Shown in pieces: positions 8,603-63,539 of a DNA stretch of 64,000 bases (its first letter is position 1; every line of letters starts with the position of its first letter). The stretch is from Selaginella moellendorffii (taxonomy: Eukaryota > Plantae > Lycopodiophyta), in assembly GCF_000143415.4 (NCBI RefSeq), contig NW_003314315.1, positions 434,001-498,000 of the forward strand. The letters are read 5' to 3'. Below the pieces are notes generated by a model that saw nothing but the letters and a program-made list of their open reading frames with translations, made no database searches and had not been told where the DNA came from. Made by a program: the position numbers and the translations under genes.

Positions 8603-9853
8603 TTATGATGATGCTAATTCACTAATGCTGATGGGAGAAACATCACCTGAAGTAGCACCAGTCCACCATCGATGAGCAGCCATACTATTAAATGCATCAG
8701 TTTGGTGAATACCATCCCAAAAGGCATACTTTGTTCTATCTTGACAAAGCCTAGCTCCAGAATTGCAATTCAAAGTATGGGATCCTTGTGGACAACAAGC
8801 ACTGGTTGAATCAATGAATCCTGTTTATTCCCAAAATATAAAATGTTAGATTGGTTAATTAAAACTAAAGCTTACCATAAGATTGTGGATTGTTGTGAAC
8901 ATCTACCATTAATCCGTAAAAATTAGTCATCACAAATTGAGCATCTTTATGAGAATTTCTTAAATTCTCAAGAGCTGATTGTAACATATTATTATATATT
9001 TGAGCTCCTTGCTGTGCAACAGATGCACATTGTCCTCCAACCACATTCAATGGAATGCATCCAACAGCACTTAATCCAACTATAACAAATTTTCTAGCAC
9101 CCAAATTATATAATGTCTGAAATCAAATAAAAATTATAAAATCAAAAATAAAATTGAAAATACTAATAATAATATTTACCTGAAGTTCATTAACAAAAGT
9201 ATTAATAATGGTTTGCTCATCAGATTGTGAAATCCTCCTTGTTCTTTGATACATATTATTAATATCATTGTTTCCTGAGCAAATATAAAAAATAGATTTT
9301 GCGACAAGAGTAGATGCATTAGATGATCCAATCATTTGAACCATTTTTTGTTTCAAACTCCTAAAGTCATCAATTTGACTTGCAAGAGCTTGTCCTCCTC
9401 CCTTTAAAATCACAAAATTATAAAGTCAAAATCAATAAAATTAATAATGTTTACCGTATGAGTTTGTGAAAGGATTCCAGAACCAGCAGAACCAAAATTT
9501 GCACCTTGAAGAATATTATTTCCAGCTTGGAAATAAGCTGGTGGTAATGGTAATCCCAAATGTAATGCTAAAAAACAGAATTATAAAATAACATTCAACT
9601 ATAAAAACAGCAAACACTTACCAATATATTCAACAAGCAAACGACCATTACAAAATCGACTTGCTTGACCTCCAGGAAAATCAACACCATAAGGATAACC
9701 AACATGAGCATTATCACCCGCATCTACTAGAGAATCCCCAAATGCAAATAAAGCTGGGACAGATGAATTCATTTGCTGAGAAAACACCCTCAAACCAGAA
9801 AACATAGCAAACACAACAAAGAAAAGAAAGAAAAGAAATGCAGAAGTTGCCAT
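8603..9853 (-). CDS. Secreted GDSL esterase/lipase, 5 exons, unusually AT-rich
   Basis: Signal peptide, FGDSLVDAG, RFCNGR, GNND, FWDGIH; GT-AG introns; TAA at 8605-8603. Confidence 0.93.
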
Positions 9854-31639: not shown

Positions 31640-32995
31640 CTAGAGATAGAGAAGCTCTTTTAGACGAGCGCGGGAAACCTCCATGGCCTCCATGGCCTTG
31701 GATTTGATTTCCTTTGCTCGTTTTCTCAGCGTTTCACTGCCCATCAAACTCCTGGAGGCTCGCTCGACTTCGCTCCTTCCAACAATCCTGGAGCTTCCAT
31801 CGCTGCTGTTCTTGCTCTCGATCCTCACCCCGACTCTCCACACGTCCACCATGAACTTACAGTTGATGGGCTGGTCGCCCATGAACGGCCACCCGATCAT
31901 CGGGACCCCGGAGCTCAAGCTCTCGAGCGTCGAGTTCCAGCCGCAGTGCGTGACAAATCCTCCCACGCTCGGGTGCCTGAGAATATCAATCTGCGAGCTC
32001 CATGACACGATCAGCCCCCGGTTTCCAATCCTCGTCCGCAAGCCCTGGAGGAAATCCCCGAGCTTTCGCTGGGAGCTCTCACGTAGGACCCAGAGAAAGC
32101 TCTGCTGGCTTGCCTCCAAGCCATAGCCGACCTCCATGACTTGTTCTTCCGGGAGCTCCACCATTGTTCCAAAGCACACGTACAACACGGACGAAACCTC
32201 TTGTGCGTCGAGCCATTCTTTTTGGACGTGATCTTCCATGCTTGATACCGCCCCGACGAGCACTGGCCCAACGTTGACAAGCTTGCCAAATCCCTGGTCC
32301 CTCAAATCACCCAAAGTTTGCTCCTCCAACTCGTCCAAAGTATTCATCATCAGCCATGGAGCCTTGAGCAGGTTCTTGAGCTTTCTCATCGAGCTAAAGC
32401 TCACTGGATCCAGAGGGTCCTCGGGGATGTCCGTGAAAACCGAGAGCTCGCAAGGAACGCCTGGTATCACGGACGAATCCACCACTTTCTTCTCGGGCGA
32501 TCGATCGTTCCTGGAGAGCGGAAGGAATCCTTTCTTCAGGAGCGTCTCGACGTTGACAGTGATGTGGAGCATGGCCGCCGACGACACCCAAAACGCAGCA
32601 ACGTTGCAAGCTAAGCTCTCGAGACGGTCGATAAGCAGGAAGTCGATGATGGCCAGGGAAACCGGCCCGAGCTCTGGAGCAGAAGCCGCGACCAGCTTCT
32701 TAATCTCGTCCGAGTTCCTGGCCATGACCTCGATGCTCTCAGGGAGCGTATAGCCGCTGCGGTTTCTATCGACTTCCAGAGCCTGGAATCTAATTGCTTG
32801 CCTCAATTTTTGGTCGCCGTCGCAGAGATGGTTGAGGGCCGAGAGTGATGCTTGGAGAGTGCTGCTCGTTGTGATGAATGTGATATCGGATCCAAGGGAC
32901 GCTAGCTGCACAGAGAGCTGGAGCAACGGATTAGTGTGGCCAGAGATTGGAAGAGGAATCACCACAACATGAGGCGGATTGCTTCGGGACGCCAT
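31640..32995 (-). CDS. Family 1 UDP-glycosyltransferase, intronless
   Basis: GHTNP and complete PSPG box WSSQ...HCGWNS...DQ. Confidence 0.95.
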   Translation of the reverse strand: MASRSNPPHVVVIPLPISGHTNPLLQLSVQLASLGSDITFITTSSTLQASLSALNHLCDGDQKLRQAIRFQALEVDRNRSGYTLPESIEVMARNSDEIKKLVAASAPELGPVSLAIIDFLLIDRLESLACNVAAFWVSSAAMLHITVNVETLLKKGFLPLSRNDRSPEKKVVDSSVIPGVPCELSVFTDIPEDPLDPVSFSSMRKLKNLLKAPWLMMNTLDELEEQTLGDLRDQGFGKLVNVGPVLVGAVSSMEDHVQKEWLDAQEVSSVLYVCFGTMVELPEEQVMEVGYGLEASQQSFLWVLRESSQRKLGDFLQGLRTRIGNRGLIVSWSSQIDILRHPSVGGFVTHCGWNSTLESLSSGVPMIGWPFMGDQPINCKFMVDVWRVGVRIESKNSSDGSSRIVGRSEVERASRSLMGSETLRKRAKEIKSKAMEAMEVSRARLKELLYL

Positions 32996-33229
32996 AGCTG
33001 ACAAGCTCTCTCGGCTTGAGACTTATACAAGAGAAGATTCTCAAAGTTATGCGTTAGGTAAGTTGATGACACCCCAACCGTCTAGTCGATCACATATGGA
33101 GACATAAACTCACAAGTGGCACCCACAAGACGGGTGGGCAGAGCCAGTGAGTGGGAGCGCGCCCGCAACGAGGACGCCACCAGATAATCCAACTTGCAAG
33201 AACTCGCTTACTCCATTTTGATACTTTTA

Positions 33230-34690
33230 TTTTAGAGCTCTAAGTAAAACTCTGACCATCGCAGCAGAGAAAGATTTGGAGTTCGTGCGCTACAAGGATT
33301 AGCCTCCGGCGAGAGGAGCTTGTTGACTTCTCCCCAGAGCTTAAGGCGCTGGGCGGTGCCGTGACGGCGCTCCCGCCGGGTGACGTGCGTCATCACGACG
33401 TTCTTGTGGGCTGGGACGGAGAAGTCGCTTGGGTGTGCCGAGGGTCGTGTTTTGGACGTCCACCATGACCGAGTGCCGTGTATAGTAACTTATCGAAGCT
33501 CGGAGCTTGCCAGTACGCGATCAGCTTGGGCTCTATGTCACGCTCTCGAGAATAACCTTGCCGCGGAAGTTTGGATCTGTGGCATGGAGTAGCGGTGTAG
33601 TCCAAGGCCTTGAGGTCCGGAAGTCCTGGAATCTTCACCGTGGTTCCGAAGTTATCTTCACCATGGTTCCGAGATCTAGCAATCCAAGTTATCTTCACCG
33701 TGGTTCCGAGATCTAGCAATCCAAGTTTTCTAAGATCACAAAGAAAAAGTTTGGAATTCGCGTACCTTTGATCGCATTCTCGGAGATGACTCCCTGGAAG
33801 GCAATGCGGTGAGAGCTCTTGAGCTATGAGGAATCAAAATCGGTCCTCTCTATCTGAACATCTCCACCGGGGACGACGATCCAGACGATCCAAACCAGGT
33901 ATTCCATGGCTGACAACAGGAGCCTCGATCGGTTCTCTACATTCCAGTCCCGGCAGTCGAATTCAAGCAGATAGCCCTGGAGGATGCATTCGCAGGCTCT
34001 TTCTGGCAACTGCGGGGAAGTAGGGAAATGTCGCCCTCGCTCACCAGAGCGCTGCCGGCAGGGATCACTTCGTCCAATTCCTCTGGTCTTTTGCCAAGAT
34101 CTCTGGAGGAAGAGCGTCCAGGAGCGGCACTCACGGCATCCTAGGAGCAAGAACAAAAGAGAGCAAACCGGTCAACACTCTAGTCAACACATAAGTTAAC
34201 GCCCAGTCTTACCAGCATGGTTCCGGCATGTTCTCGAGCGAGAGCAGGAAGCTCTGGCTTTGTTCTTGCTTGGCCATGGAAGATCGGTGCACGTCCATGT
34301 GCGCTTGGAGCAAGGCATGCACACTGTCCTCAGCTTGGGCAGCGAGAGATCCATTTGATCCATGGGAAGCAATCGCCGATGTGGAGGCCCCCGCTGAGCT
34401 CATTCGCGCTGGATCAAGCGGATGAAATCGTCCACATCGAAGCTTCGGCTCGTCCCAAACACGAGCGCTTGCATGATCCCGAGGACAGTCAGCTCCTGGC
34501 TCATGTTCACTGACATGCTCGTCCAAGTTCCTGGCCACGATCTCGATGACGCTGCGGTTTCTATCGACTTCCAGAGCCTAAAATCTAATGGCTTGCTTTG
34601 GTCGCCATGACAGAGATGGTTGAGGGCAAACAGTGATGCTCGGAGAGTGATGACCTTTACAACAAGAGAATATTCTCAAACTTATGCGTA
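33230..34690. pseudogene. Mosaic of UGT and P450 fragments in mixed orientation
   Basis: 33255-33505(+), 33505-33790(-) and 33790-34010(+) match the UGT at 35365; 34060-34520(-) is a P450 fragment; 34540-34690 matches the 5' part of the UGT at 31640. Confidence 0.85.
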
Positions 34691-35364
34691 AGCATAAGGA
34701 CCAGAATGTCTCCTAGTGTTGCTGTTGGTGTGTGTATGTGTCTATTGCTCCTCAGCTAACTCTCCCCGTGTTCACCTAACTCTTAACATAAAGCAAATCT
34801 CAACATATAAAGTTTACATTATAATCTCAACAACTCACAACACACTTGAAACTTTGCATTCATGTTTCAAGTTGGGCATTGCAAAACCATAAACAGCATA
34901 TATAAATAAAATGCTTGAGAGACCATTAAGTGATAGCTTGGGGTGTGTAAATTATGAAGCATGAAATAGCATTGAGCTTGAAGGTTGTGTGGAGCGTATC
35001 ATGTGTCGTAACAAAAAAAAATGTATTATTAAGTTTATGAGCATATCATAGCATATTTCTTGGTCACCTACTCTTTGTGATCCTTTTCTTTTGCTGAGTT
35101 CATCACACTTTTTCCAGAGCTCTAAGTAGAACTTCAAATCATAGTGGTCAATTCGTTGTGTTTTCAAGAAAGAATCAAGAGTAAAGAAAGAAAGAAAAAC
35201 AACAGTTACTAGAATTCGTGGGCTTGCTAGTTTACTGCCACGTATGAGAGCATTTGAGCGAACAACGAGTACGACGGACAAATAAAAGACAAGGAGGAAC
35301 GAGCTCAGCTATGCTGGAGCAGAAAACCATCAGAAAAGGAAAACTTTGAATTCTTCTCGGAGCT

Positions 35365-36818
35365 ATGGAGGAACAACACTTGGATCACATACACATTCTC
35401 GCAGTGCCATTCTTCCTCAAGGGCCATGAGATCCCTCTCCTCCATCTCTGTCGCCATCTCCACTCTCTCACTGGCGGCCGGATCGCCGTCACGATCCTCC
35501 AGCTCCCGCAAAACAAGTCGCCACTCTCTGGAGGGGCGACACCATCGCAGCGAGAGAAAGGTTTGGAGTTTGTGCGCTACGAGGATTTGCCGCTGGAGCC
35601 TCCGGCCGAGAGGAGCTTGCAGCTCTTCCTCGACTTCTTCCCAAAGTTTAAGGCGCTGGGCGGTGCGGTGTCGGCGCTCTGGCGGCACCGCCGGGTGACG
35701 TGCGTCATCACCGACGTTCTCGTGGGCTGGGGTGGAGAAGTTGCCCGTGACTTGGGCGTGCCATGGGTCGCGTTTTGGACGTCCACCATGACCGAGCTTG
35801 CCGTGTATAGTAACTTACCAAGGCTCATCTCTGAGAATGCGATCAAAGGTACGTGAACTCCAAACCTTTTCTTTGTGATCTTAGAAATGGATTGCTAGAT
35901 CTCGAAGCCACGGTGAAGGTTCCAGGACTTCCGGACCTCAAGGCCTTGGACTACACGACGCTACACCATGCCACAGATCCAAACTTCCGCGGCAAGGTTC
36001 TTGTCGAGACCTTTGTGGAAGCCGTGCGGTATAGCACCCAAGCTGATCGAGTACTGGCAAACTCCTCCCACGCCCTGGAAGGCAATGCGGTGAGAGCTCT
36101 CGAGCTATGTGGAATCAACATCGTTCCAGTGGGTCCTCTCCATCTAAACATCTCCACCGGGGGTGATCCAGACGATCCAAACCAGGTGATTCCATGGCTG
36201 GACAAACAGGAGCCTCGATCGGTGCTCTACATTGCGTTTGGAACGGTCGCTCCAGTCCCGGCAGCCCAATTCGAGCAGATAGCCCTGGCTCTGGAATCTA
36301 CTAAGAACATCGCTTTCCTATGGGTGGTACGCCCGGAGCAGCTCAAGCTAGTACCGAAGGAATTCGGCTGTACCGCGCGGTACGCTTTCAAGTCTGGTGA
36401 CACCGTTAATGGGACGGTATACCGCGGGCTGCTAACCGACTGGGCACCCCAGGTTGCGGTCCTCGGGCACCGTGCAGTGGGCGGTTTCTTGACGCATTGT
36501 GGATGGAATTCGATCTTGGAGAGCATCACTGTTGGCGTTCCTGTGATCTCGATGCCTCGAATGGCCGATCAGTGCTTGACGCGCAAGATCTTGGACGAGG
36601 AGTGGGGGGTTTCGGTACGATTGGGTAACACGGTTACTGACGCTGTGAGCAAGACCGATTTGGAGGCTGCGATCGAGGAGCTCATGTTTGAAAGGCGGGA
36701 TGAGCTTGGAAAGAAAGCGAGCGATCTTGGAGAACTCGCTAGACAGGGCATGGAAGAAGGAGGATCTTCTCGATCCGGCATCGATTCCTTGGTCAAAGAC
36801 CTTTTACTGTGGAAGTAA
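35365..36818 (+). CDS. Family 1 UDP-glycosyltransferase, one intron (~35850-35898)
   Basis: GHEIP and PSPG WAPQ...HCGWNS...DQ. Confidence 0.94.
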
Positions 36819-36856
36819 ACGCTAGTCAAAAATTTCTTTATTGGTATTTGAAATTT

Positions 36857-37344
36857 CTAGAAGTGGAGTACGCGTAGATCGAAGGAGAACGTGGAATTGA
36901 TGTCCTCCACGATTCGATCGACGAGAGCGTAGCCTTTGGCAAACAAAAACTCGCCAGTGCCAGTAGCGATTGGGAGCTGACCACTGGAATTCGTGACGGC
37001 GCTGAGAAACGTAGGCTACTGCCCTGGAATTCGTCTAGAGTGAGCGTCACAGACACCAGAGATGTGAGGCTATCCATCGACACCACCGTGCTCGTCCCTC
37101 GAATCCTTCCTACTTCGCGGGAATCGCTCGATCGGCTCACAGTCACGGGATCATCCACGACCGCGATGGCTCCGAATGGATTCGCCGGGTTTCCCAGGCT
37201 GGGAACTCCAGTGGTGACGAGGAAATCGGTGACATTGAAGAAGTCCTGCCAAAAAAGCCTGCGGTGAAGGGATCTCGCGCTGGAAATCTGGAGAGCGACA
37301 AGCGCGATGGCCGAGAGGAAGAGTAATTTGTTAACGCTAGCCAT
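36857..37344 (-). pseudogene. Dirigent protein gene with a 1-nt frameshift near 37012
   Basis: Signal peptide, FGAIAVVDDP, VGRIRG; the alternate frame gives LPIATGTGEFLFAKGYA...VLHF stop. Confidence 0.85.
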
Positions 37345-37449
37345 TATGGAGAAATTTTCAAGGAGAAACGAAGTTTTAAACCAAAAGTTTGGTGCCAACC
37401 AACCAAAGATCTAGTGCCGTGTTGAGAACAACTATAGAAAAATCTACTT

Positions 37450-37610
37450 GGTTCTTCCTAGAAGTTCTTCCAAGAAGTTCTTCCATAGAATCTATTGTCC
37501 AGTCAATTGCGAAGACAAAATAATCAACGAACTAGAAGTTCTTCCCAGAAGTTACCAGGAGTCAAAAAAAACTATGACTCTCCAGTCAAGAAAAGTCAAT
37601 CGTAGTCAAC
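37450..37610. promoter_or_regulatory. W-box cluster and AGAAGTTCTTCC repeats in the DIR/UGT divergent promoter
   Basis: Five AGTCAA (TTGACT on minus) at ~37501, 37560, 37583, 37593, 37603. Confidence 0.45.
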
Positions 37611-37819
37611 GAGAAAGTTGGCACGGTAGCCAAGGAGAACATAAATTTAAAGGCTGCCATGCACCGATTGGTGGGAGTATCTACACGTCCACAAGCATCC
37701 ATAATGGAACTTCTGGCCACTGTGCTTTTTCAGATCCGCCGTGATCCCCGTGACACAGTTTTCTCGCATATAAGTTCATCCATTTAGTCTATCAAGCATT
37801 GTCTTGCAAGTCTAGAGCA

Positions 37820-39278
37820 ATGGTGGACGATCAGCAAGTTCCACACCTCCTCGCCATCCCATTCTTCTTCCGGGGCCACGAGATCCCTCTCCTCCACCTC
37901 TGCCGCCACTTCAAATCCCGCGGAGCAAAGTTCCTCGTCACGATTCTTCGCACCTCCCGCAGCAAACCCACTGCTCCTCCCAAGGATCTGGCCGGGTTCG
38001 TGAGGTTCGAGGGGTTTCCAGACGATATCAATCTCCCGGCCGAGAGGAACTTGGAGCTCTTCATTCAATTCTTCAAACGGTTCCAGGGGGAGCTGGGCGA
38101 CTTCGTGCTTGACAGGTGGCAGTGCCGCCCGGTAACGTGCGTCATCTGCGACGTGCTCGTGGAGTGGGGCGAGCGCGTCGCGCGGCACCTGGGCGTTCCA
38201 TGGATCGCGTTCTGGACGTCCACCGTTTTGGAGATGGCGATGGCTTCCCACGTTCCACGGCTCATCGCGGAGAATGCAATAAAAGGTGAGTGAACGAACC
38301 AAAAGGAGAGGAAGCTCACTGTGTTTTTGCATAGATCCCGAGAGCATCATCAAGATTCCAGGCCTGCCGGATTTCCAAGTCCGCGACTACGTCACTCTGT
38401 CCAACGTGATCAATCCGAACTTCCCCATGAAGTTCATGATCGAGTCTCTCGTTGATACCGTGCGGCGTACCGCCGGGGCCGACATGATCCTCGCTAATTC
38501 CTCCGGCCTGCTAGAGGACGACGCTATCAAAACGCTGGAGAGCTCCGGGATCAAAGTCACTCCAGTCGGTCCCTTACACCTGATCGATCAAGACAACGAT
38601 CCCAAAGATCCAGACAAGGTAATCTCGTGGCTGGACGAGCAAGATCCAGCCTCGGTTCTCTACATTTGTTTTGGAACGGTGGCTCCAATGCCGGTTGGTC
38701 AGATGGAAGAGCTCGCAATGGCTCTTGATTCCACCGGAGTATCCTTTCTTTGGGTGGTGAGACACGACCACTTGAAGGACATACCGCCGGGATTCACCGC
38801 CAAGCACGGCATTTCCAACGGTACCAACGGTACAAATGGCGGTACCAACGGGTGTACCGCGCGGCACCGCGGGCTGCTAACCGACTGGGTGACCCAGCCG
38901 CGCGTCCTTGGGCACCGTGCCGTGGGCGGCTTCCTCACGCACTGCGGCTGGAACTCTGTGATGGAGAGCATCACTGCGGGAGTCCCGATGATCACGCGGC
39001 CGCTCATGGGCGATCAAACGCTGACAGCCGCGATGCTCAGGCAGGCATCCATGCCCGCGATCGCGCTCCCGACATCAAAGGGCGGTGCCGTGACCAAGAC
39101 GGAGATTGTGGCAGCCATCGAGGAGCTCATGGTGAGAGAGAGAGGCGCGGAGCTCCGGCGCCGTGCGGGTGATGCTGCGGCGCTCGTTCGCAGTGGGATG
39201 GAGAACGGCGGGTGCCTGGATTCTCTCGTCACTGAGCTCAACATTCTCGCCAAGAACCCTAAAAATCGTCTTGCCTAG
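37820..39278 (+). CDS. Family 1 UDP-glycosyltransferase, paralog of the 35365 gene, one intron (~38286-38334)
   Basis: GHEIP and PSPG WVTQ...HCGWNS...DQ. Confidence 0.94.
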
Positions 39279-40377
39279 ATTCACACTATATTTCAGTCAA
39301 TAAAGTTTGACTTTGCTTGTTTAATTACCTCTCCATCCATTTTAACAACTTCTCTATTTCATAGCGCCTGAATTATGTAACTTCAGGAAACATGCTGCTA
39401 AACTCTACCTTTGTTTTCGAGAGTTTATTATGCAATGTATAATTGAGAGACCATTGTATGTACACAACCAAAGTAACAATTGCAAATTTAAAATCTATCA
39501 AGCTCTATCCAAACAAAGCTCGCGAAAAGCAAAACAAGCCCTAGAACAGATTAGAATCAAGATCTCTGCCATAATTGCCAGCCAAAACGATCTTTTGAGA
39601 TAATTGCCTGAAAATTGTAAATAGAATTGGACCAGGATACATGGTAGATTGGGAGCTTCGCATTTACAAAGCTCTTTCTTCAATGGGATAGATCGATCTC
39701 ACGCAGAATTGGAGGCTTTTGAAAGACACACTGGGAGATGGCCAAAGTGGACATGCAAACGGAGTTCTTTGATCTAAGACCAAAGACCAAAGTTTTCAGG
39801 TCCACTTTGGATTGGCTTGGATGCCCAGCGTCTCTCTTTTCAGCCTGCAATTCTGAGCTCCTGTCATGGTGAATAGTGAGATCAACATGGTGATGATGAT
39901 GCAGACCGAGACCAATGCCCATTTGAAGAAAGAGCTCTGTCATTGCAAAGCTCCCAATCTGCCCATCCTAGGAGCTTCGCTTTGGTTCCGTTCACAATTT
40001 TCAGGCAATTATCTCGGAAGAAAGATATATGCCATTTCTTTCCTCCAATTGTGAAAGTCTAAAGATGGGAATGTGAATTGTTGCCAACATTACATTCAGG
40101 CTTTGCTCGCGGATCCGGCGATCACTGTGTTCCAGACCATTGCATCGTGCCAGGGTATCCACGAGAAGACGTGATCGGCGCAGCGGAGGTCTCCCAGCGG
40201 CGACATACAAGAAGAGAAAAATCCAGAAGCACGCAAGATTATTTGAATAACAAAACGAACCTTATCAATCAGATAGGGTGCTCGTGCATGAAATGTGTGA
40301 CGAAACTCTAGGCAAAGAATGTCATAAGATGACGTCCTCTATTTCACAGCGCCTGGCCAGTATAATGATTTTTTGAA

Positions 40378-40647
40378 GTGTGAAATGTACAAATTCTGAT
40401 CCACCATCTGATACGCAATAAAATCATTGATATGCTTACCTAGAGGAGTCGCTTTTCAAAATCCATCAATGCTTTCCATCTCGTTCTTGCCAATCTTCTA
40501 AACAACTTGAACCCTGTCACATTTACCACCACTCGAAGTTCTACAGAGGATTGGCAAGAATTAGAACTGATGGATTTTGAAAGCAAGTAAACATATCAAT
40601 GGAAGACAGATTTTATTGCGTATTAGAGATTTGAGTACATTTCACGC
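40378..40647. ncRNA. 270-nt fold-back hairpin, candidate MIRNA precursor with P450-derived stem
   Basis: Five nested complementary blocks; 40477-40499 is identical to P450 coding sequence. Expression unknown. Confidence 0.6.
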
Positions 40648-40750
40648 CACACAATATAGTGAGTTGGCAGTAGGTCACGAACGTATCCATTAACAAAGCA
40701 AGAGCAGATTTTAATAAACACACTCTGTTTATTCTAGTCAATATGCTTCA

Positions 40751-42313
40751 TTACTTGCGGAGAAGTGGAACCAATACAAGTGGACGAGCCCGCATGAGCG
40801 TGAACCCGACCCCCTCGCCCACGTCCACCTCTTTACCATCCGGTGTTGTCCAGTTGAACCTGTAGAGAAGATTGGCAAGAACGAGATGAACAGCAGTCAA
40901 CCCCAAGTTCATCCCCGGGCAGGATCGCCGGCCAAAGCCAAACGTCATGAGTTCCACGGCCGCATTGAATTCGCTGCTCATCCTCTCCGGGATGAACTCC
41001 AGAGGATTCTCCCAGATGCTTGGATCCCGGCCGATGGCGTAGAGGTTGATCAACACTTGGGTCTTGGCTGGGATCGTGTAGCCAGCTTCTTCAAGCTTTC
41101 ATACACGTTGATAACAAATTCAGAGATCTAGCGAGGATCAAACCTTTTAGACTACTTACCTTACAGTCGGTAGTGGATTCGCGTGGAACCATGAGTGGCG
41201 CCGGAGGGTGCTTGCGCAGGGTCTCCTTGACAATCGCGCCGAGGTACTTGAGCTTGGGAATGTCGGCCTCGCTCACCATGGCGCTACTAGCAGGGATCAC
41301 GTCGTCCAATTCCTTCTGAGCTTTTGCCAAGATTTGTGGATGAAGAAGTAGCTCTGTGAGGGCCCATTCTATCGCTGTGGCAGTCGTGTCCAGCCCTGCA
41401 CTCACAGCATCCTAGCAAGGACGGCCAACGAGTTAGTCAACACTCAAGTCAACCCCAGTCTTACCAGCATGAGGCACCGGATGGTAAGATCTGACATGTT
41501 GTCGAGCGAGAGCAAGACGTCCAGGAAGCTCTCGCCGCCATGTCCTTGCTTGGCTATAGAGGATCGGTGCTCTTCAATGTGTGCTTGAAGCAAGACATGG
41601 AATTTGGTTGCTAAGGTTCTCAGCTTGGGCAGCGAGAGATCCATCCATTTAAGCCATGGGATGTAATCGCCGATGTGTAGCCTCCCTCCCAGCTCGTTCG
41701 CCTGGTGGGCCAAGCGGAGGAAATCGTTGGCACCGAAGGTCCGGCTCGTCCCAAACACGAGCGTTTGCATGATCTCCAAGGTGAGGACGCTGAGCTCCTG
41801 GGTCATGTTCACCGTTCTTCTCAGATTCTGGGAGAGCATCGCCAGGAACTTCTCCATCTCCGCTTGCCTCACTGCCGCAAAGCTCCCCACGCGGCGCGCG
41901 GTGAAGAGCTCGAGCGTGCAGATCTTGCGGAGCTCCCTCCATCTCGCGCCATAGCGCGCGAAGACGAGATCGTCTGGGAGGATCGCCTCGGCAAACGTGA
42001 GCGATGGCCGCGAGGAGAAGATCCTGTCGTGTGTCTTGAGAATCTCTTGGGCGATCTTGGCTGAGGAGATGACGAGCGTGGGGGTGTAGCCCAGGCGGAG
42101 GTAGAAGATCGGGCCGAGCTTCTTGGCGAGATCGAAGAGGATGAGATGCGACCCGCGGGAATTGCTGGCCAGGAGTGGAATGTGGCCGAGGATTGGAAAG
42201 GCCCAGGGGCTTGGAGGCATGACATGAGAGCTGCGTGATTTAGATCGATCATAGTAGAAGATCACCAAGATGAAAGAAGCCAAGAAGGCGAAAAAAGCTG
42301 TGATGTGCTCCAT
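40751..42313 (-). CDS. Cytochrome P450, CYP71 clan, copy 1 (3 exons, appears intact)
   Basis: N-terminal anchor, PPSP hinge, [23 protein letters not shown]. Confidence 0.95.
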
Positions 42314-44567
42314 GGAAGTTTGGAAATGTAGTGTGTCCTTATATACACTTCAAATGGAAACTTCGGAAGCCTTCGCATGAGAAACAACCCTTCTAGAAAA
42401 TAAAGATGTTATTTTTGTCTTATTTCAATATGCCTTTTGTTGAGCAACAACCTTTCTAAAAAATAAAGAATTTCGATATGAATTCCATACCCACATATGG
42501 AGAATTTTGAACTTAGGTTTTAATTGTTGTAAATGGTGTTAAGTTAAGCATATTTTAACTCATCCTTAGTATGGATTAATTATAGTGTAATCATGCCAAA
42601 TGTGATTTTGAGGTTTTTCCCTTTTATCTTGATATTTCCTTATGTTTCTTTTCATTTTTATTCCTCTTTGTCTTGTGTTAACAGTGTGAAATAGATGTGG
42701 GAAACTAAAGAGATAGTTTGAATTGATTTAGCGCAAAACACTAAGTCAAACTCAAATTAGGTGGTATTAGCATAATGAAGCTCCTACAAAGCATGGAACT
42801 CATATGCTCATGCTTCACACACTTAAGGATATCTATTGCCACCTTTTGATCATCTCTCCAAGTCCTCAGACACTAAGTAGTAACCAAGAAGTGAATGACA
42901 TCCTCTTGATGAACCTATTTGTATCTCATAGTAGTCTAGTTCGCTTGAGAAAGTCGGCCACACACAAGAGGTGCTCGCATGATAAGTCTATTATCCACAT
43001 TCATATTATCACCATCTTATACCATACATGAGGATTATACAGAGTGGAAATGCCTAGAAAACTAGAAGCAGAAGCATCATCTCTTATTTCAAGTTTTTCC
43101 TTTCTAATCATCCCCAAAGGATATAAATGAAGAGTTAGTTGTGTCTTAGCACAAGGGTCACCACATCTATGATTCCTATATCACAAACACTTAAGAATTG
43201 AATGGAATTGTTTACTTAAGAAATAGACCTCTCACTATGGACAATCGATAAGTACAAAGTAATCAAATCCAATTCCTCTGAGATAAGAAAAACTTTCCCT
43301 AAAAAAAGCAACCACCTTACATCAACCAAGTTTATGATGCATTTTATACACAAAAATAATAGTAATTTCAAACGTTTTAGTAATTTTTAACATAATTATA
43401 ATTATAATATACATAGCTAATACAACATAATATAATATTTATATAAAAATCCCTTTTACAATTGACCCTATCACCATAATATAACAAATATAACTTATAA
43501 CATAATATAACATTTAAAACTCGGAATGCTAAGTGAAGTTTTGAGTGTTCTACTGAGATGAAAATGCCAGCTATGGGATCTTATGGTTAAATGAGTTGTT
43601 TAAAGCTTGGCAATTTAAATGAGGCTTGGTAGTAAAGGAATGGATATAATTATGGTTATCTTGGACTTCAACTTGGGTCCATCTCAGACTCAATTTCAAC
43701 ACTTCCATGTGTTATGTGTTGGTCAGAAATCCATGATTGGGTTTGTTAACCAGTAAAAAAGGAGAGATTACATATTTAAATTTGACCCTGTATATGATTA
43801 ATTATAGCAAACTTGGAAAATTAAATATTATGGATAACTATCTAAATAAATAAAACTTGGAGCTAAAAAAATTACATTAGTTATAGTTACTGAAGAGACA
43901 AGTTTTATATGAGATGAATTTAGAGTTAAAATTATTGAAGTGAAGGTTACAAAATACTGAAATTAATGTGATAATTTAAAGTATGTGTAGGAAATAATAC
44001 TTAATTATTTGGATAGTAATTATTAAATTTACACATATCAATACAAATGGTAAGAGTATAAAAATTACTTTCAAGTAAGATAAAAGTGAAGTAGTGACAT
44101 AATATATGGAGGATCATCTCTAATCTAATATAAAGGAGTTGAATAGCTCGAGTTATTCCATTTGATAATAAAGTCATCAGTGAAATTAATCATTCCTTTA
44201 AAAGTCCAAATAAGCTATTCACTAAACCATCTATATATGGATGATAAGCACTTGTAAAAGTATAATGTATCCCTAATCAAGATATTAAAACATGAAATGC
44301 CTTAGCCATAAATACAAAACCATTACTTGAGATAAATTGCTCTAAATAGAACACCACTCAATTGAGGAAGTATTTAATAACAATTGCTAAGTCACTAGCA
44401 AGGGCATTGATTTCCATTTAGTGAGTCAAGTAGTCAGAGGCAACAATGACATATTCATTATTAGTAGTTAATTGTGGAAAAAACCTCATTAGATCAAACA
44501 CTATTAACTCAAATGGACGTAAAATTGCAATTGATTTCAACCATCCTTTCGTAGTACGAGGGAGAGT

Positions 44568-47355: not shown

Positions 47356-48909
47356 ATGGAGCACATCACAGCTTTTTTCGCCTTCTTGGCTTCTTTCTTC
47401 TTGGTGATCTTCTACTATGATCGATCTAAATCACGCAGCTCCCATGTCATGCCTCCAAGCCCCCGGGCCTTTCCAATCCTCGGCCACATTCCACTCCTGG
47501 CCAGCAATTCCCGCGGGCCGCATCTCATCCTCTTCGATCTCGCCAAGAAGCTCGGCCCGATCTTCTACCTCCGCCTGGGCTACACCCCCACGATCGTCAT
47601 CTCGTCAGCCAAGATCGCCCAAGAGATCCTCAAGTCCCACGACAGGACCTTCTCCTCGCGGCCATCGCTCACGTTTGCCGAGGCGATCCTCCCAGACGAT
47701 CTCATCTTCGCGCGCTATGGCGCGAGATGGGCAAGATCTGCACGCTCGAGCTCTTCACCGCACGCCGCGTGGGGAGCTTTGCGGCAGTGAGGCAAGTGGA
47801 GATGGAGAAGTTCCTGGCGATGCTCTCCCAGAATCTAGGAAGAACGGTGAACATAACCCAGGAGGTCACCGTCCTCACCTTGGAGATCATGCAAACGCTC
47901 GTGTTTGGGACGAGGCGGACCTTCGGTGCCAACGATTTCGTCCGCTTGGTCCACCAGGGGAACGAGCTGGGCGGGAGGCTACACATCGGCGATTACGTCC
48001 CATGGCTTAAATGGATGGATCTCTCGCTGCCCAAGCTGAGAACCTTAGCAACCAAATTCCATGCCTTGCTTCAAGCACACATTGAAGAGCACCGATCCTC
48101 CATAGCCAAGCAAGGACATGGCGGCGAGAGCTTCCTGGACGTCTTGCTCTCGCTCGACAACATGTCAGATCTTACCATCCGGTGCCTCATGCTGGTAAGA
48201 CTGGGGGTTGACTTGAGTGTTGACTAACTCGCTGGCCGCTCTTGCTAGGATGCTGTGAGTGCAGGGCTGGACACGACTGCCACAGCGATAGGATGGGCTC
48301 TCACGGAGCTACTTCTTCATCCACAAATCTTGGCAAAAGCCCAGAAGGAATTGGACGACGTGATCCCTGCTAGTAGCGCCATGGTGAGCGAGGCCGACAT
48401 TCCCAAGCTCAAGTACCTCGGCGCGATTGTCAAGGAGACCCTGCGCAAGCACCCTCCGGCGCCACTCATGGTTCCACGCGAATCCACCGCCGAGTGTAAG
48501 GTAAGTAGTCTAAAAGGTTTGATCCTCGCTAGATCTCTGAATTTGTTATCAACGTGTATGAAAGCTTGAAGAAGCTGGCTACATGATCCCAGCCAAGACC
48601 CAAGTGTTGATCAACCTCTACGCCATCGGCCGGGATCCAAAAATCTGGGAGAACCCTCTGGAGTTCATCCCGGAGAGGATGAGCAGCGAATTCAATGCGG
48701 CCGTGGAACTCATGACGTTTGGCTTTGGCCGGCGATCCTGCCCGGGGATGAACTTGGGGTTGACTGCTGTTCATCTCGTTCTTGCCAATCTTCTCTACAG
48801 GTTCAACTGGACAACACCGGATGGTAAAGAGGTGGACGTGGGCGAGGGGGTCGGGTTCACGCTCATGCGGGCTCGTCCACTTGCATTGGTTCCACTTCTC
48901 CGCAAGTAG
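47356..48909 (+). pseudogene. Cytochrome P450 copy 2, frameshifted by a 10-nt deletion near 47730
   Basis: Lacks AGGGAGCTCC present in copies 1 and 3 (WRELRK). Confidence 0.9.
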
Positions 48910-49599
48910 TCAAACATATTGACTATAATAAACAGAGTGTGTTTATTAATTTTGCTTTGTGCGAAGGTTAGATTGGAAGCTCCTAATCTGCCATGATCCT
49001 GGTCCAATGGGCTTCGGTTCAGTTCTCAGGCAATTATCTCAAAAGATCTACCAGGGCAAAGATCTTGATTTCTTCCTCTCTCTAATCTGTTCTGGTCTTA
49101 CTTTGCACAAGCTTTGTTTGGATACTGGGCCCATTTTTGGGCTCCAGCATGTGTAAATGAATGGATATATTTAGAATATACTAGCAATGAATGTAGCTAT
49201 TACACAAAATTAAGTCTTCAAAGATGTTTTTTGGATTTCAAACTGTTCATGGTTGCAAATTTATTTAAAAAAAGAACAATGCACCAAGTTCCTTCTTTTA
49301 TTACCATTACTATTTCCCTTCCTGCTTTGCTTGCACTAACTTCTTATAGCTCTTATGTGAATTTCTCTTTAAGAGTCTAAAGACAAATTAGTTTGTCAAG
49401 AGGTAAACCATTACAAGGAAATGGCTCACATTTTTACACTTTACTGCTTTGTCCAATTCTAAATTTCTTTAGTAGTGATCCCATATAACATCATCAACTC
49501 AATAATGCTTTGGCAATAGTTAAGTCCTTAGGATTAACTTTTGCATTTCTGCTCAGAATAGAAAGACAAGTATTGCTTTGGTCATATTGATGGATTTTT

Positions 49600-59975: not shown

Positions 59976-61337
59976 AGTAAGAGCTGAGGTACAGCACTGT
60001 ATATTTGTGTTTTATTTTTAAAGAGACGTTATTAGCAGAAACTTCCAACTTTCGAGAAAGCATGGTAGAGAATGTCACTTTTTGAGATAGACTTCTGGAG
60101 AATCCCTGTTTTTCAAGGCAAGAATCCACCATTCTCTCTTCATTTTCAATGAGAAATTTGTCTAGCATGACTGAGTAACGACTGCTAAAATTTATGTGGA
60201 AAACTTTAGAACACAGAAGTTACAAGTTGGTCTTTCATTGAGAATGAGCATGTGCTCTAGTTTTTTTATAGGATGCTGTTGGTTGGACAACAAGGACTTA
60301 CGACATTGTTCTATTGGTTCTTTGGATGAGCAATGCATCAAGGTTCAAGTATGAAAGTTTTCAATCAGGTCTGAGCCAGTAAGTAGAGTCTCTTGAGGAA
60401 ATTCTTAAGGAATGTTACAATCAGAATCAAAATTTCCTATAGATTTGGAAATGGAACCTCTGACCAGAGCTCCAGTTTTTCAAGCCTTCTGCCAATTCTC
60501 TGGATTGATGAGATCTCATCAATCCAACACGCAGCTTTGGCAGCCACAATTATGTCCAGAGAATTGTTGCTCCTGCCTGTGTCATGAGTCCCTTCAATTC
60601 CATGTCTCTGCAATTGAGGCACTTGCAAGCTTGCTCAGTCCTTGATTAAAAATCCATCAATATGACCAAAGCAATACTTGTCTTTCTATTCTGAGCAGAA
60701 ATGCAAAAGTTAATCCTAAGGACTTAACTATTGCCAAAGCATTATTGAGTTGATGATGTTATATGGGATCACTACTAAAGAAATTTAGAATTGGACAAAG
60801 CAGTAAAGTGTAAAAATGTGAGCCATTTCCTTGTAATGGTTTACCTCTTGACAAACTAATTTGTCTTTAGACTCTTAAAGAGAAATTCACATAAGAGCTA
60901 TAAGAAGTTAGTGCAAGCAAAGCAGGAAGGGAAATAGTAATGGTAATAAAAGAAGGAACTTGGTGCATTGTTCTTTTTTTAAATAAATTTGCAACCATGA
61001 ACAGTTTGAAATCCAAAAAACATCTTTGAAGACTTAATTTTGTGTAATAGCTACATTCATTGCTAGTATATTCTAAATATATCCATTCATTTACACATGC
61101 TGGAGCCCAAAAATGGGCCCAGTATCCAAACAAAGCTTGTGCAAAGTAAGACCAGAACAGATTAGAGAGAGGAAGAAATCAAGATCTTTGCCCTGGTAGA
61201 TCTTTTGAGATAATTGCCTGAGAACTGAACCGAAGCCCATTGGACCAGGATCATGGCAGATTAGGAGCTTCCAATCTAACCTTCGCACAAAGCAAAATTA
61301 ATAAACACACTCTGTTTATTATAGTCAATATGTTTGA

Positions 61338-62901
61338 CTACTTGCGGAGAAGTGGAACCAATGCAAGTGGACGAGCCCGCATGAGCGTGAACCCGACCCC
61401 CTCGCCCACGTCCACCTCTTTACCATCCGGTGTTGTCCAGTTGAACCTGTAGAGAAGATTGGCAAGAACGAGATGAACAGCAGTCAACCCCAAGTTCATC
61501 CCCGGGCAGGATCGCCGGCCAAAGCCAAACGTCATGAGTTCCACGGCCGCATTGAATTCGCTGCTCATCCTCTCCGGGATGAACTCCAGAGGGTTCTCCC
61601 AGATTTTTGGATCCCGGCCGATGGCGTAGAGGTTGATCAACACTTGGGTCTTGGCTGGGATCATGTAGCCAGCTTCTTCAAGCTTTCATACACGTTGATA
61701 ACAAATTCAGAGATCTAGCGAGGATCAAACCTTTTAGACTACTTACCTTACACTCGGCGGTGGATTCGCGTGGAACCATGAGTGGCGCCGGAGGGTGCTT
61801 GCGCAGGGTCTCCTTGACAATCGCGCCGAGGTACTTGAGCTTGGGAATGTCGGCCTCGCTCACCATGGCGCTACTAGCAGGGATCACGTCGTCCAATTCC
61901 TTCTGGGCTTTTGCCAAGATTTGTGGATGAAGAAGTAGCTCCGTGAGAGCCCATCCTATCGCTGTGGCAGTCGTGTCCAGCCCTGCACTCACAGCATCCT
62001 AGCAAGAGCGGCCAGCGAGTTAGTCAACACTCAAGTCAACCCCCAGTCTTACCAGCATGAGGCACCGGATGGTAAGATCTGACATGTTGTCGAGCGAGAG
62101 CAAGACGTCCAGGAAGCTCTCGCCGCCATGTCCTTGCTTGGCTATAGAGGATCGGTGCTCTTCAATGTGTGCTTGAAGCAAGCCATGGAAATTATCTGCT
62201 AAGATCCTCAGCTTGGGCAGCGAGGGATCCATCCATTTTAGCGATGGGATGTAATCGCCGATGTGTAGGCTCCCGCCCAGCTCGTTCCCCTGGCGGATCA
62301 AGTGGAGGAAATCTTTGGCATCGAAGGTCCGGCTCGTCCCAAACACGAGCGTTTGCATGATCTCCAAGGTGAGGACGGTGAGCTCCTGGGTCATGTTCAC
62401 CGTTCTTCCCAGATTCTGGGAGAGCATCGCCAGGAACTTCTCCATCTCCACTTGCCTCACTGCCGCAAAGCTCCCCACGCGGCGCGCGGTGAAGAGCTCG
62501 AGCGTGCAGATCTTGCGGAGCTCCCTCCATCTCGCGCCATAGCGCGCGAAGACGAGATCGTCTGGGAGGATCGCCTCGGCAAACGTGAGCGATGGCCGCG
62601 AGGAGAAGGTCCTGTCGTGGGACTTGAGGATCTCTTGGGCGATCTTGGCTGAGGAGATGACGATCGTGGGGGTGTAGCCCAGGCGGAGGTAGAAGATCGG
62701 GCCGAGCTTCTTGGCGAGATCGAAGAGGATGAGATGTGGCCCGCGGGAAGTGCTGGCCAGGAGTGGAATGTGGCCGAGGATTGGAAAGGCCCGGGGGCTT
62801 GGAGGCATGACATGGGAGCTGCGTGATTTAGATCGATCATAGCAGAAGATCACCAAGAAGAAAGAAGCCAAGAAGGCGAAAAAAACTGTGATGTGCTCCA
62901 T
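61338..62901 (-). CDS. Cytochrome P450, CYP71 clan, copy 3 (3 exons, appears intact)
   Basis: Same motifs as copy 1; exon 1 open; ATG at 62901. Confidence 0.94.
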
Positions 62902-63539
62902 GGAAGTTTGGAAATGTAGTGTGTCCTTATAAACACTTAAAAAGGTGGAATTTTCTATGACGGAAACTTCTATAAGCTGGAAGCGAGAAACAACCCTTCT
63001 ACGTTTTGAAGTAAAACATAAACACCCTTTTCTGGTCTTATTTCGATCTAAAAAAATGCAAGGTTTCAAAATTGAAGGCCCATCTCGTGCGTCTTCTTCC
63101 TGCTACTCCTCCTCGTCTTCAATTCTTCGTGTAAATCGTAAATCGCATCATATTCCTCCTAGATTCTGGAAAGATGCTTTTAAACCTTTTTGGACTGAAA
63201 TAACGTAAAGAGCTAGACCTTGCTAAATTTTGAGGTCACTTTTATTGAAAGTACATGGTCAACACACTTCAGTTGACTCCCGGTTGTTCAGCATTAGAGA
63301 CTGATTTTGTTACGCATGATTTTGAATTTGTGCATTCTAATCCGGTACCTAATGGTCAGCTTCTGCAAGTTATGTGATTTAAAGCTGTGGGATAGAGGAC
63401 GTCCATCCGTAGTCAAATTTTATGACCTGATAGACAAGGTTTCCCTTTTGTTGTGAAGGACTTATGTTGTTGTTTTGGAGAGACCATTTACGTTCAATTG
63501 GGAGACCAATTTACCTATTGTACGAATTTCGTTAAAATC

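What the first reader, a model, noticed from the sequence alone, without database searches (positions are those of the whole stretch)
40378..40647. MIRNA-like hairpin built from P450 sequence, 103 nt downstream of the P450 it could silence
Seen: nested complementary blocks GTGTGAAATGTAC/GTACATTTCACGC, CTGATACGCAATAAAATC/GATTTTATTGCGTATTAG, CATTGATATGCTTAC/GTAAACATATCAATG, TTCAAAATCCATCA/TGATGGATTTTGAA and TTCTTGCCAATCTTCT/AGAGGATTGGCAAGAA around a ~45-nt loop. The inner 5' arm (40477-40499, CATCTCGTTCTTGCCAATCTTCT) is identical to the coding strand of all three P450s (40866-40888, 48772-48794, 61453-61475; HLVLANL just after the heme motif). A minus-strand transcript (P450 read-through or 3' UTR) would carry a perfect 23-nt antisense guide. 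A plus-strand transcript, favoured by three G:U pairs and TATA-like sequence at 40337-40366, would give an imperfect antisense guide from 40542-40562. Known: young plant MIRNA genes can arise by inverted duplication of their targets. Inference: a lineage-specific small-RNA feedback control embedded in a metabolic cluster.
Basis: partly seen in the sequence, partly recalled or inferred. Interest (0 to 1): 0.85.

Follow-up and report, generated by a model that had tools for sequence, protein, structure and literature searches.

The report
P450-fragment hairpin between two spikemoss genes
In the spikemoss Selaginella moellendorffii, a real 270-base DNA palindrome between a P450 gene and a sugar-transferase gene carries a short piece of the P450 at its tip, so it looks like raw material for a microRNA, but I found no sign that it is transcribed or under selection.

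Summary
Window 40378-40647 folds into a roughly 100-bp stem on either strand (-100 and -104 kcal/mol, z about -11). Its 23-mer at 40477-40499 is identical to the coding strand of all three CYP792A-type P450 copies.

- **Origin:** only the apex comes from the P450 (43 nt on the 5' arm, 37 nt on the 3' arm). The outer ~90 nt of each arm show no P450 likeness.
- **Strand:** no strand is favoured (5 G:U pairs on plus, 7 on minus).
- **Known families:** Rfam gives no miRNA match.
- **Transcription:** stranded RNA-seq raw reads show P450 reads (minus strand) stopping near the stop codon and a UGT 3'UTR (plus strand) ending at about 40357. There are no reads on 40362-40703.
- **Conservation:** the hairpin is also in the other haplotype (GL377612.1) with 2 changes in 270 nt, which is no lower than the local rate.
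- **Transposon test:** no target-site duplication was found, and likeness to another locus crosses the hairpin's edge, which argues against a MITE.

Best reading: a young, locally made inverted duplication. It could be a Dicer substrate (proto-MIRNA or hairpin-siRNA candidate), but its activity is unproven and it is probably neutral at present. Small-RNA reads could not be examined. The scan noted the same hairpin on the other haplotype (s1-395689).

The parts
40378..40647 (.). Hairpin HP1: an inverted repeat with a roughly 100-bp interrupted stem. Weaker pairing extends to 40368-40657.
40378..40468 (.). Outer 5' arm, with no likeness to the P450. Its first ~20 nt, together with the left flank from about 40328, resemble sequence upstream of P450 paralogues.
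40469..40478 (.). 10-nt asymmetric bulge on the 5' arm. The 3' arm lacks these bases; they are P450-like.
40470..40512 (+). P450-like piece of the 5' arm, in the sense of the P450 coding strand. 36 of 43 bases are identical, including the exact 23-mer at 40477-40499.
40479..40499 (.). 5' half of the 21-bp apex duplex. It pairs with 40545-40565 with 1 mismatch (40482) and 2 G:U pairs.
40513..40528 (.). Spacer between the two P450-like pieces, at the axis of the inverted duplication.
40529..40565 (+). P450-like piece of the 3' arm, antisense to the P450 mRNA. 28 of 37 bases are identical.
40566..40647 (.). Outer 3' arm, with no likeness to the P450.
40866..40888 (-). Putative target site in P450 copy 1 (codons HLVLANL, after the heme-binding Cys motif).
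48772..48794 (+). The same 23-mer in P450 copy 2. This copy has a frameshift near residue 124.
61453..61475 (-). The same 23-mer in P450 copy 3.
40751..42313 (-). P450 copy 1 (CYP792A1-type, three exons). An AATAAA lies about 25 nt after the stop codon, and likeness to copies 2 and 3 ends near 40711.
37754..39278 (+). UDP-glycosyltransferase gene, convergent with P450 copy 1.
40289..40357 (+). Segment that is the end of the UGT 3'UTR in the other haplotype. It is covered by an RNA contig and one stranded read, and ends 20 nt before the hairpin.
39310..40288 (.). 979-nt stretch present in this haplotype only. It holds a second hairpin (39585-40025, -194 kcal/mol) made of the P450's 3' flank and an inverted copy of that flank.

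Best explanation
HP1 is a young inverted duplication made on the spot, in the short gap between the convergent UGT and CYP792A1 genes of Selaginella moellendorffii. The duplicated unit already joined about 90 nt of non-P450 sequence to a ~45-50-nt scrap of the CYP792A last exon, so the exon scrap now sits in both orientations at the apex. This part is shown.

The result is a ready-made Dicer substrate: a proto-MIRNA or hairpin-siRNA candidate. If RNA polymerase II runs past the poly(A) site of the P450 (minus strand) or the UGT (plus strand), the RNA would fold. Dicer-like enzymes would cut it into 21-22-nt RNAs, and those from the 21-bp apex duplex could guide slicing of the three CYP792A mRNAs at the HLVLANL codons. 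This part is inferred.

On present evidence the locus is most likely neutral, or at most a weak and imprecise siRNA source. It does not look like an established miRNA gene or a proven feedback loop. My rough odds:
- inert by-product: about 50%
- weak siRNA source without real regulatory effect: about 30%
- real regulator of the P450s: about 12%
- transposon: about 8%
For: - **Structure:** the fold is real and far beyond chance.
- **P450 content:** the P450 likeness is confined to 40470-40512 and 40529-40565, at the axis of symmetry.
- **Shared change:** both arms carry AC where the P450 has GG, so the scrap had already diverged before the inversion.
- **Local rearrangement:** copies 2 and 3 have no hairpin downstream. 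The same gap holds a second hairpin made of the P450's own 3' flank, and P450 scraps occur elsewhere in the cluster, so local rearrangement is frequent here.
- **Age:** the hairpin is present in both haplotypes.
- **Neutral pattern:** there are 2 changes in 270 nt between haplotypes against a local rate of 0.7-2% (P = 0.09-0.49). G:U pairs split 5 to 7 between the strands.
- **Transcription:** stranded raw reads show P450 and UGT transcripts ending on either side, and nothing on 40362-40703.
- **Pairing:** the apex duplex and the guide-target pairing satisfy the structural rules of 10.1101/213314.
Against: - Small-RNA libraries could not be examined, so activity is not excluded.
- The RNA-seq test is weak. 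Only about 12% of each run was read, the P450 depth was 1-7, and many of those reads carried paralogue letters. An efficiently diced precursor would leave little long RNA in any case.
- The exact 23-mer inside a piece that is otherwise 84% identical could reflect selection or gene conversion rather than chance.
- The origin of the outer arms is unknown, and genome-wide copy number could not be measured.
Confidence: 0.55

Rival explanations
1. A working, lineage-specific MIRNA-like gene. Read-through from the P450 or the UGT, or a promoter of its own, yields a defined 21-22-nt guide that slices CYP792A mRNAs. This would give dosage feedback on the triplicated P450.
For: The foldback is 270 nt. 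The apex duplex is 21 bp with 1 mismatch and 2 G:U, bounded by a bulge below and an internal loop above. There is an exact 23-nt match to all three copies. The plus-strand guide has only 1 mismatch and 2 G:U, with positions 10-11 paired (my pairing by hand of the letters). The hairpin is kept in both haplotypes. miRNA-guided cleavage is documented in this species (PMC5569507).
Against: No long RNA covers it. Rfam gives no match. The supplements of PMC5569507 held as text contain neither the core sequence nor any P450 target. There is no excess conservation and no strand bias in G:U pairs. A ~100-bp near-perfect stem is expected to give mixed siRNAs rather than one precise duplex. The hairpin lies outside both inferred mature mRNAs.
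Confidence: 0.12
2. A MITE or other foldback transposon, or part of one, that happens to carry a captured P450 scrap.
For: The whole element is an inverted repeat of MITE-like size. An 18-nt exact run (21 of 22) from the start of the 5' arm recurs in L001 at 9213-9234. The outer arms have no identified source.
Against: I saw no target-site duplication in the flanks of 40378/40647 or 40368/40657 (by eye; no systematic scan). No second copy exists in the 64-kb window, L001 or L002. The likeness to L001 and to the region upstream of copy 3 starts outside the hairpin (about 40328) and runs across its edge, so 40378 is not an element terminus. The captured scrap lies exactly at the axis of symmetry, as fold-back duplication predicts.
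Confidence: 0.08
3. A natural-antisense (cis-NAT) siRNA source, in which the UGT and P450 transcripts overlap across the gap.
For: The genes are convergent. Their stop codons are about 520 nt apart in the other haplotype.
Against: Stranded reads show both transcripts ending short of the hairpin, with no overlap. This rests on low depth.
Confidence: 0.05

Closest known systems
Young plant MIRNA genes formed by inverted duplication of their target genes (Arabidopsis MIR161 and MIR163; Allen et al. 2004, as cited in PMC3498362 and 10.1101/213314; miR163 and its SABATH methyltransferase targets, PMC5388894)
   Same: Both arms are like the target gene beyond the 21-nt duplex. The target is a specialised-metabolism enzyme family. 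The foldback is of precursor size.
   Different: Here the target likeness is only 37-43 nt per arm and the outer arms are unrelated. The hairpin sits 103 nt from its parent gene. No small RNA or cleavage has been shown. The organism is a lycophyte.
Hairpin-derived siRNA loci, i.e. long inverted repeats cut into mixed or phased siRNAs (mentioned in 10.1101/213314)
   Same: A long near-perfect stem of about 100 bp, which would be expected to give several siRNA species.
   Different: At 270 nt it is much shorter than typical long inverted-repeat loci. Expression is unknown.
MITE-derived miRNA-like hairpins (10.1101/213314 warns that these are often mistaken for miRNAs)
   Same: Size and palindromic build.
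   Different: No target-site duplication, no other copies in the ~114 kb that could be searched, and flank likeness that crosses the hairpin's edge.

Membership tests
Plant MIRNA (2018 criteria, 10.1101/213314) | Foldback of at most 300 nt | tested here: met
   270 nt, or 290 nt with the weak extension.
Plant MIRNA (2018 criteria, 10.1101/213314) | Duplex region not interrupted by secondary stems or by internal loops larger than 5 nt | tested here: met
   40479-40499/40545-40565 is continuous. A 10-nt bulge abuts it but does not interrupt it.
Plant MIRNA (2018 criteria, 10.1101/213314) | At most 5 mismatched positions in the duplex, of which at most 3 asymmetrically bulged | tested here: met
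   1 mismatch, 2 G:U, no bulge.
Plant MIRNA (2018 criteria, 10.1101/213314) | miRNA/miRNA* pair seen in small-RNA sequencing, precision at least 75%, in at least 2 libraries | not testable with these tools
   The run index works on 31-letter words, longer than a small RNA, and the single read-laying run went to RNA-seq runs.
Plant MIRNA (2018 criteria, 10.1101/213314) | Precursor transcript exists | tested here: inconclusive
   No reads on 40362-40703 in 3 stranded runs, each about 12% read and with neighbouring genes at low depth. No RNA run holds hairpin words.
Described miRNA family | Match to an Rfam miRNA model | tested here: not met
   Nothing falls on the hairpin. All hits in 39000-41200 are far below gathering score.
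MIRNA by inverted duplication of the target | Both arms like the target gene beyond the mature duplex | tested here: met
   43 nt at 84% and 37 nt at 76%. The outer ~90 nt per arm show no likeness.
MIRNA by inverted duplication of the target | Guide-directed cleavage of the parent gene family | not testable with these tools
   No degradome data were reachable. The pairing itself is adequate.
MITE | Target-site duplication flanking the terminal inverted repeats | tested here: not met
   The flanks at 40378/40647 and at 40368/40657 share no direct repeat that I could see (by eye).
MITE | Many dispersed copies | tested here: inconclusive
   No other copy in the window, L001 or L002 (about 114 kb). 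The whole genome was not searchable.
MITE | Sharp element boundary against unrelated flank | tested here: not met
   Likeness to L001 9137-9234 and to window 63300-63403 runs from about 40328 across 40378 to about 40400. The likeness is weak.

The most novel reading that the evidence does not exclude
A self-limiting circuit encoded next to the gene. Transcription that runs past the CYP792A1 poly(A) site produces, from the hairpin 103 nt downstream, a perfect antisense 21-23-mer against CYP792A1 itself and its two near-identical neighbours. Output of the amplified P450 array would then be capped by its own read-through. This would be happening in a lycophyte for which PMC5569507 found no phased siRNA clusters, no miR390 and no prominent 24-nt small-RNA peak.
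Probability: 0.1. Interest if true: 0.7.

Novelty: new member of a known kind. Interest (0 to 1): 0.35.

Why it matters
If small RNAs do come from the apex, this would be a very early stage of MIRNA birth caught in a lycophyte. The precursor would still lie beside its parent gene inside a UGT/P450 array. That would make the inverted-duplication model, and read-through-driven self-silencing of a metabolic gene family, directly testable. If they do not, the locus is one more example of how rearrangement in tandem gene arrays throws up miRNA-like hairpins, and a caution for structure-only miRNA prediction.

Tried and rejected
- **Outer arms from the P450 or another gene in the window:** sensitive blastn and shuffle-controlled global alignments found nothing.
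- **Hairpins downstream of copies 2 and 3:** none.
- **Insertion model:** I first read the hairpin as part of a ~1-kb insertion relative to copies 2 and 3. The second haplotype changed this. The hairpin is shared, while 39310-40288 is a separate 979-nt indel.
- **RNA words in X13 and X14:** these looked like hairpin expression, but they come from the UGT 3'UTR at 40289-40357 of the other allele. The contig continues into sequence like that just after the UGT stop and ends in adapter.
- **Gene upstream of copy 3:** not a UGT.
- **Likeness between the two hairpins:** the short matches are not collinear and are probably chance.
- **Literature:** full-text search for the core sequences returned only unrelated primers. 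'CYP792' gave nothing relevant. The supplements of PMC5569507 held as text had no match.
- **Look-ups that failed:** The look-up of encoding contigs had no record for P0001, P0003 or P0006.

Full report
**Observation**

As RNA it folds into one long interrupted stem: -100.2 kcal/mol on the plus strand (z -10.6) and -104.5 kcal/mol on the minus strand (z -11.2). None of 200 dinucleotide shuffles folds as well. Weaker pairing extends to 40368-40657.

The 23-mer at 40477-40499 recurs exactly at 40866-40888(-), 48772-48794(+) and 61453-61475(-), against 0 expected by chance. The P450 reading frame ends at 40751, which is 103 nt from the hairpin.

**Organism and genes**

The P450 is 98% identical to Selaginella moellendorffii SELMODRAFT_114008, named CYP792A1 in UniRef.

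The window holds three copies that are 96.5% identical over 40711-42371.
- Copy 2 has a frameshift near residue 124.
- A decayed P450 fragment lies at about 33978-34513.
- Three UGT genes lie to the left.
- The UGT at 37754-39278(+) is convergent with P450 copy 1.

**Anatomy of the hairpin**

Only the apex is P450-like.
- 40470-40512 matches the coding strand at 36 of 43 positions.
- 40529-40565 matches the antisense strand at 28 of 37 positions.
- A 16-nt spacer separates the two pieces.

The outer arms (40378-40468 and 40566-40647) score no better against the P450 than shuffled sequence does. They have no other match in the window.

The apex stem 40479-40499/40545-40565 is 21 bp with one mismatch and two G:U pairs. 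It sits above a 10-nt asymmetric bulge (40469-40478) and below a 4-nt internal loop.

Both arms carry AC where the P450 has GG, so the scrap had already diverged slightly before it was inverted. The 3' arm lacks 8-10 nt that the 5' arm and the P450 share.

G:U pairs number 5 on the plus strand and 7 on the minus strand.

**Comparison with the other haplotype and with paralogues**

Locus L002 (scaffold GL377612.1) is collinear with the window at 96-98% identity.
- It contains the hairpin with only two substitutions (40583 G>T and 40608 A>G). Both lie outside the base pairs of the predicted fold.
- That rate (0.74%) is not below the local substitution rate of 0.7-2%.
- L002 lacks window 39310-40288. 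In L002 the UGT 3'UTR joins 40289 directly.

The extra 979 nt in the window hold a second hairpin at 39585-40025 (-194 kcal/mol, z -11.8). Its outer arms are the P450's own 3' flank and an inverted copy of that flank.

Copies 2 and 3, and the paralogous locus L001 (GL377581.1), have no hairpin downstream.

An 18-nt exact run (21 of 22) from the start of the 5' arm recurs in L001 at 9213-9234. Weaker collinear likeness ties about 40328-40400 to L001 9137-9234 and to window 63300-63403, upstream of copy 3. This likeness crosses the hairpin's left edge. I saw no target-site duplication in the flanking sequence. Together these argue against a MITE terminus at 40378, although genome-wide copy number could not be measured.

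**Expression**

No indexed run that is listed or guessed as RNA holds hairpin words. The few words held by X13 and X14 come from a 593-nt contig that matches only 40289-40357. That contig continues into sequence like the one just after the UGT stop. It is therefore the UGT 3'UTR of the allele without the 979 nt, and it ends 20 nt before the hairpin.

In three stranded RNA-seq runs kept as raw reads (about 12% of each read, 9.2 million records each):
- P450 last-exon reads reach depth 1-7 in X33 and X34, none in X32, with the first mate on plus, so the RNA is on minus. They fall to zero near 40750.
- One read with the opposite orientation covers the UGT 3'UTR segment.
- No read lies on 40362-40703.

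An AATAAA lies about 25 nt after the P450 stop codon, and likeness among the copies ends near 40711. The hairpin therefore probably lies outside both mature mRNAs, in the read-through zone of both genes.

This is weak negative evidence. Depth was low, many P450 reads carried paralogue letters, and an efficiently diced precursor leaves little long RNA. Small-RNA reads could not be examined.

**Known families**

Rfam 15 gives nothing on the hairpin. The supplements of You et al. 2017 that are held as text (PMC5569507) contain neither the core sequence nor any P450 target. That study centred on conserved miRNAs, so this is also weak.

The same paper reports, for this species, no prominent 24-nt small-RNA peak, no detectable phased siRNA clusters, no miR390, and degradome evidence that miRNA-guided cleavage occurs.

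Against the 2018 plant miRNA criteria (10.1101/213314), the structural items are met and the expression items are untested.

**Reading**

The geometry fits a fold-back or template-switch duplication of a unit that already joined non-P450 sequence to a short exon scrap.
- The gene scrap sits exactly at the axis of symmetry.
- The arms differ by about 12 transitions plus indels.
- A second hairpin next door is built from the P450's flank.
- P450 scraps occur elsewhere in the cluster.

The perfect 23-mer does not require selection. The differences within it are on the 3' arm only, and a run of that length can survive by chance at this level of divergence. A short gene-conversion tract from the P450 is an alternative that I could not test.

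The hairpin is a competent Dicer substrate if it is transcribed, and apex-derived guides would pair with all three CYP792A copies. The paralogue in L001 has one mismatch in the site.

I place about 50% on an inert by-product, 30% on a weak siRNA source, 12% on a real regulator, and 8% on a transposon.

**Earlier notes of this scan**

Note s1-395689 lists the same hairpin on another piece of the genome. I confirmed the allele independently. Notes s1-432147 and s1-358671 list other gene-derived hairpins in this genome. I did not test them.

Noticed in passing
window 39585-40025: A second long hairpin (441 nt, -194 kcal/mol, z -11.8). Its outer arms are the P450's 3' flank and an inverted copy of that flank. 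It lies in a 979-nt stretch (39310-40288) that the other haplotype lacks.
   Followed up: partly
window 47356-48906 (P450 copy 2): The reading frame shifts near residue 124 (around 47712-47730), so this copy looks like a pseudogene or carries an assembly error.
   Followed up: partly
window 33978-34513 (-): A decayed P450 fragment (34-52% protein identity, several stops) between two UGT genes.
   Followed up: no
window 40741-40811, also 48849-48919 and 61328-61398: In all three window copies the last 23 residues of the deposited CYP792A1 protein (P0001) align in a different frame from the preceding residues. Either the published model or the reading frame here differs at the C-terminus.
   Followed up: no
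L001 7688-8057: A partial P450 copy (exon 2-3 pieces, with one mismatch in the 23-nt site) lies inside a called 474-residue gene with no Pfam hit, upstream of the full P450 in GL377581.1.
   Followed up: no
window 40357/40358 and about 40691: The two haplotypes differ by a 12-nt indel immediately left of the hairpin and a 45-nt indel about 45 nt to its right. The RNA contig of X13 ends (in adapter) exactly at the 12-nt indel site.
   Followed up: no
window 31643-39278: Three UGT genes in a row beside the P450 array. The allelic locus L002 also lists a dirigent-domain gene call within this stretch. This could be a tandem array or a candidate metabolic cluster.
   Followed up: no
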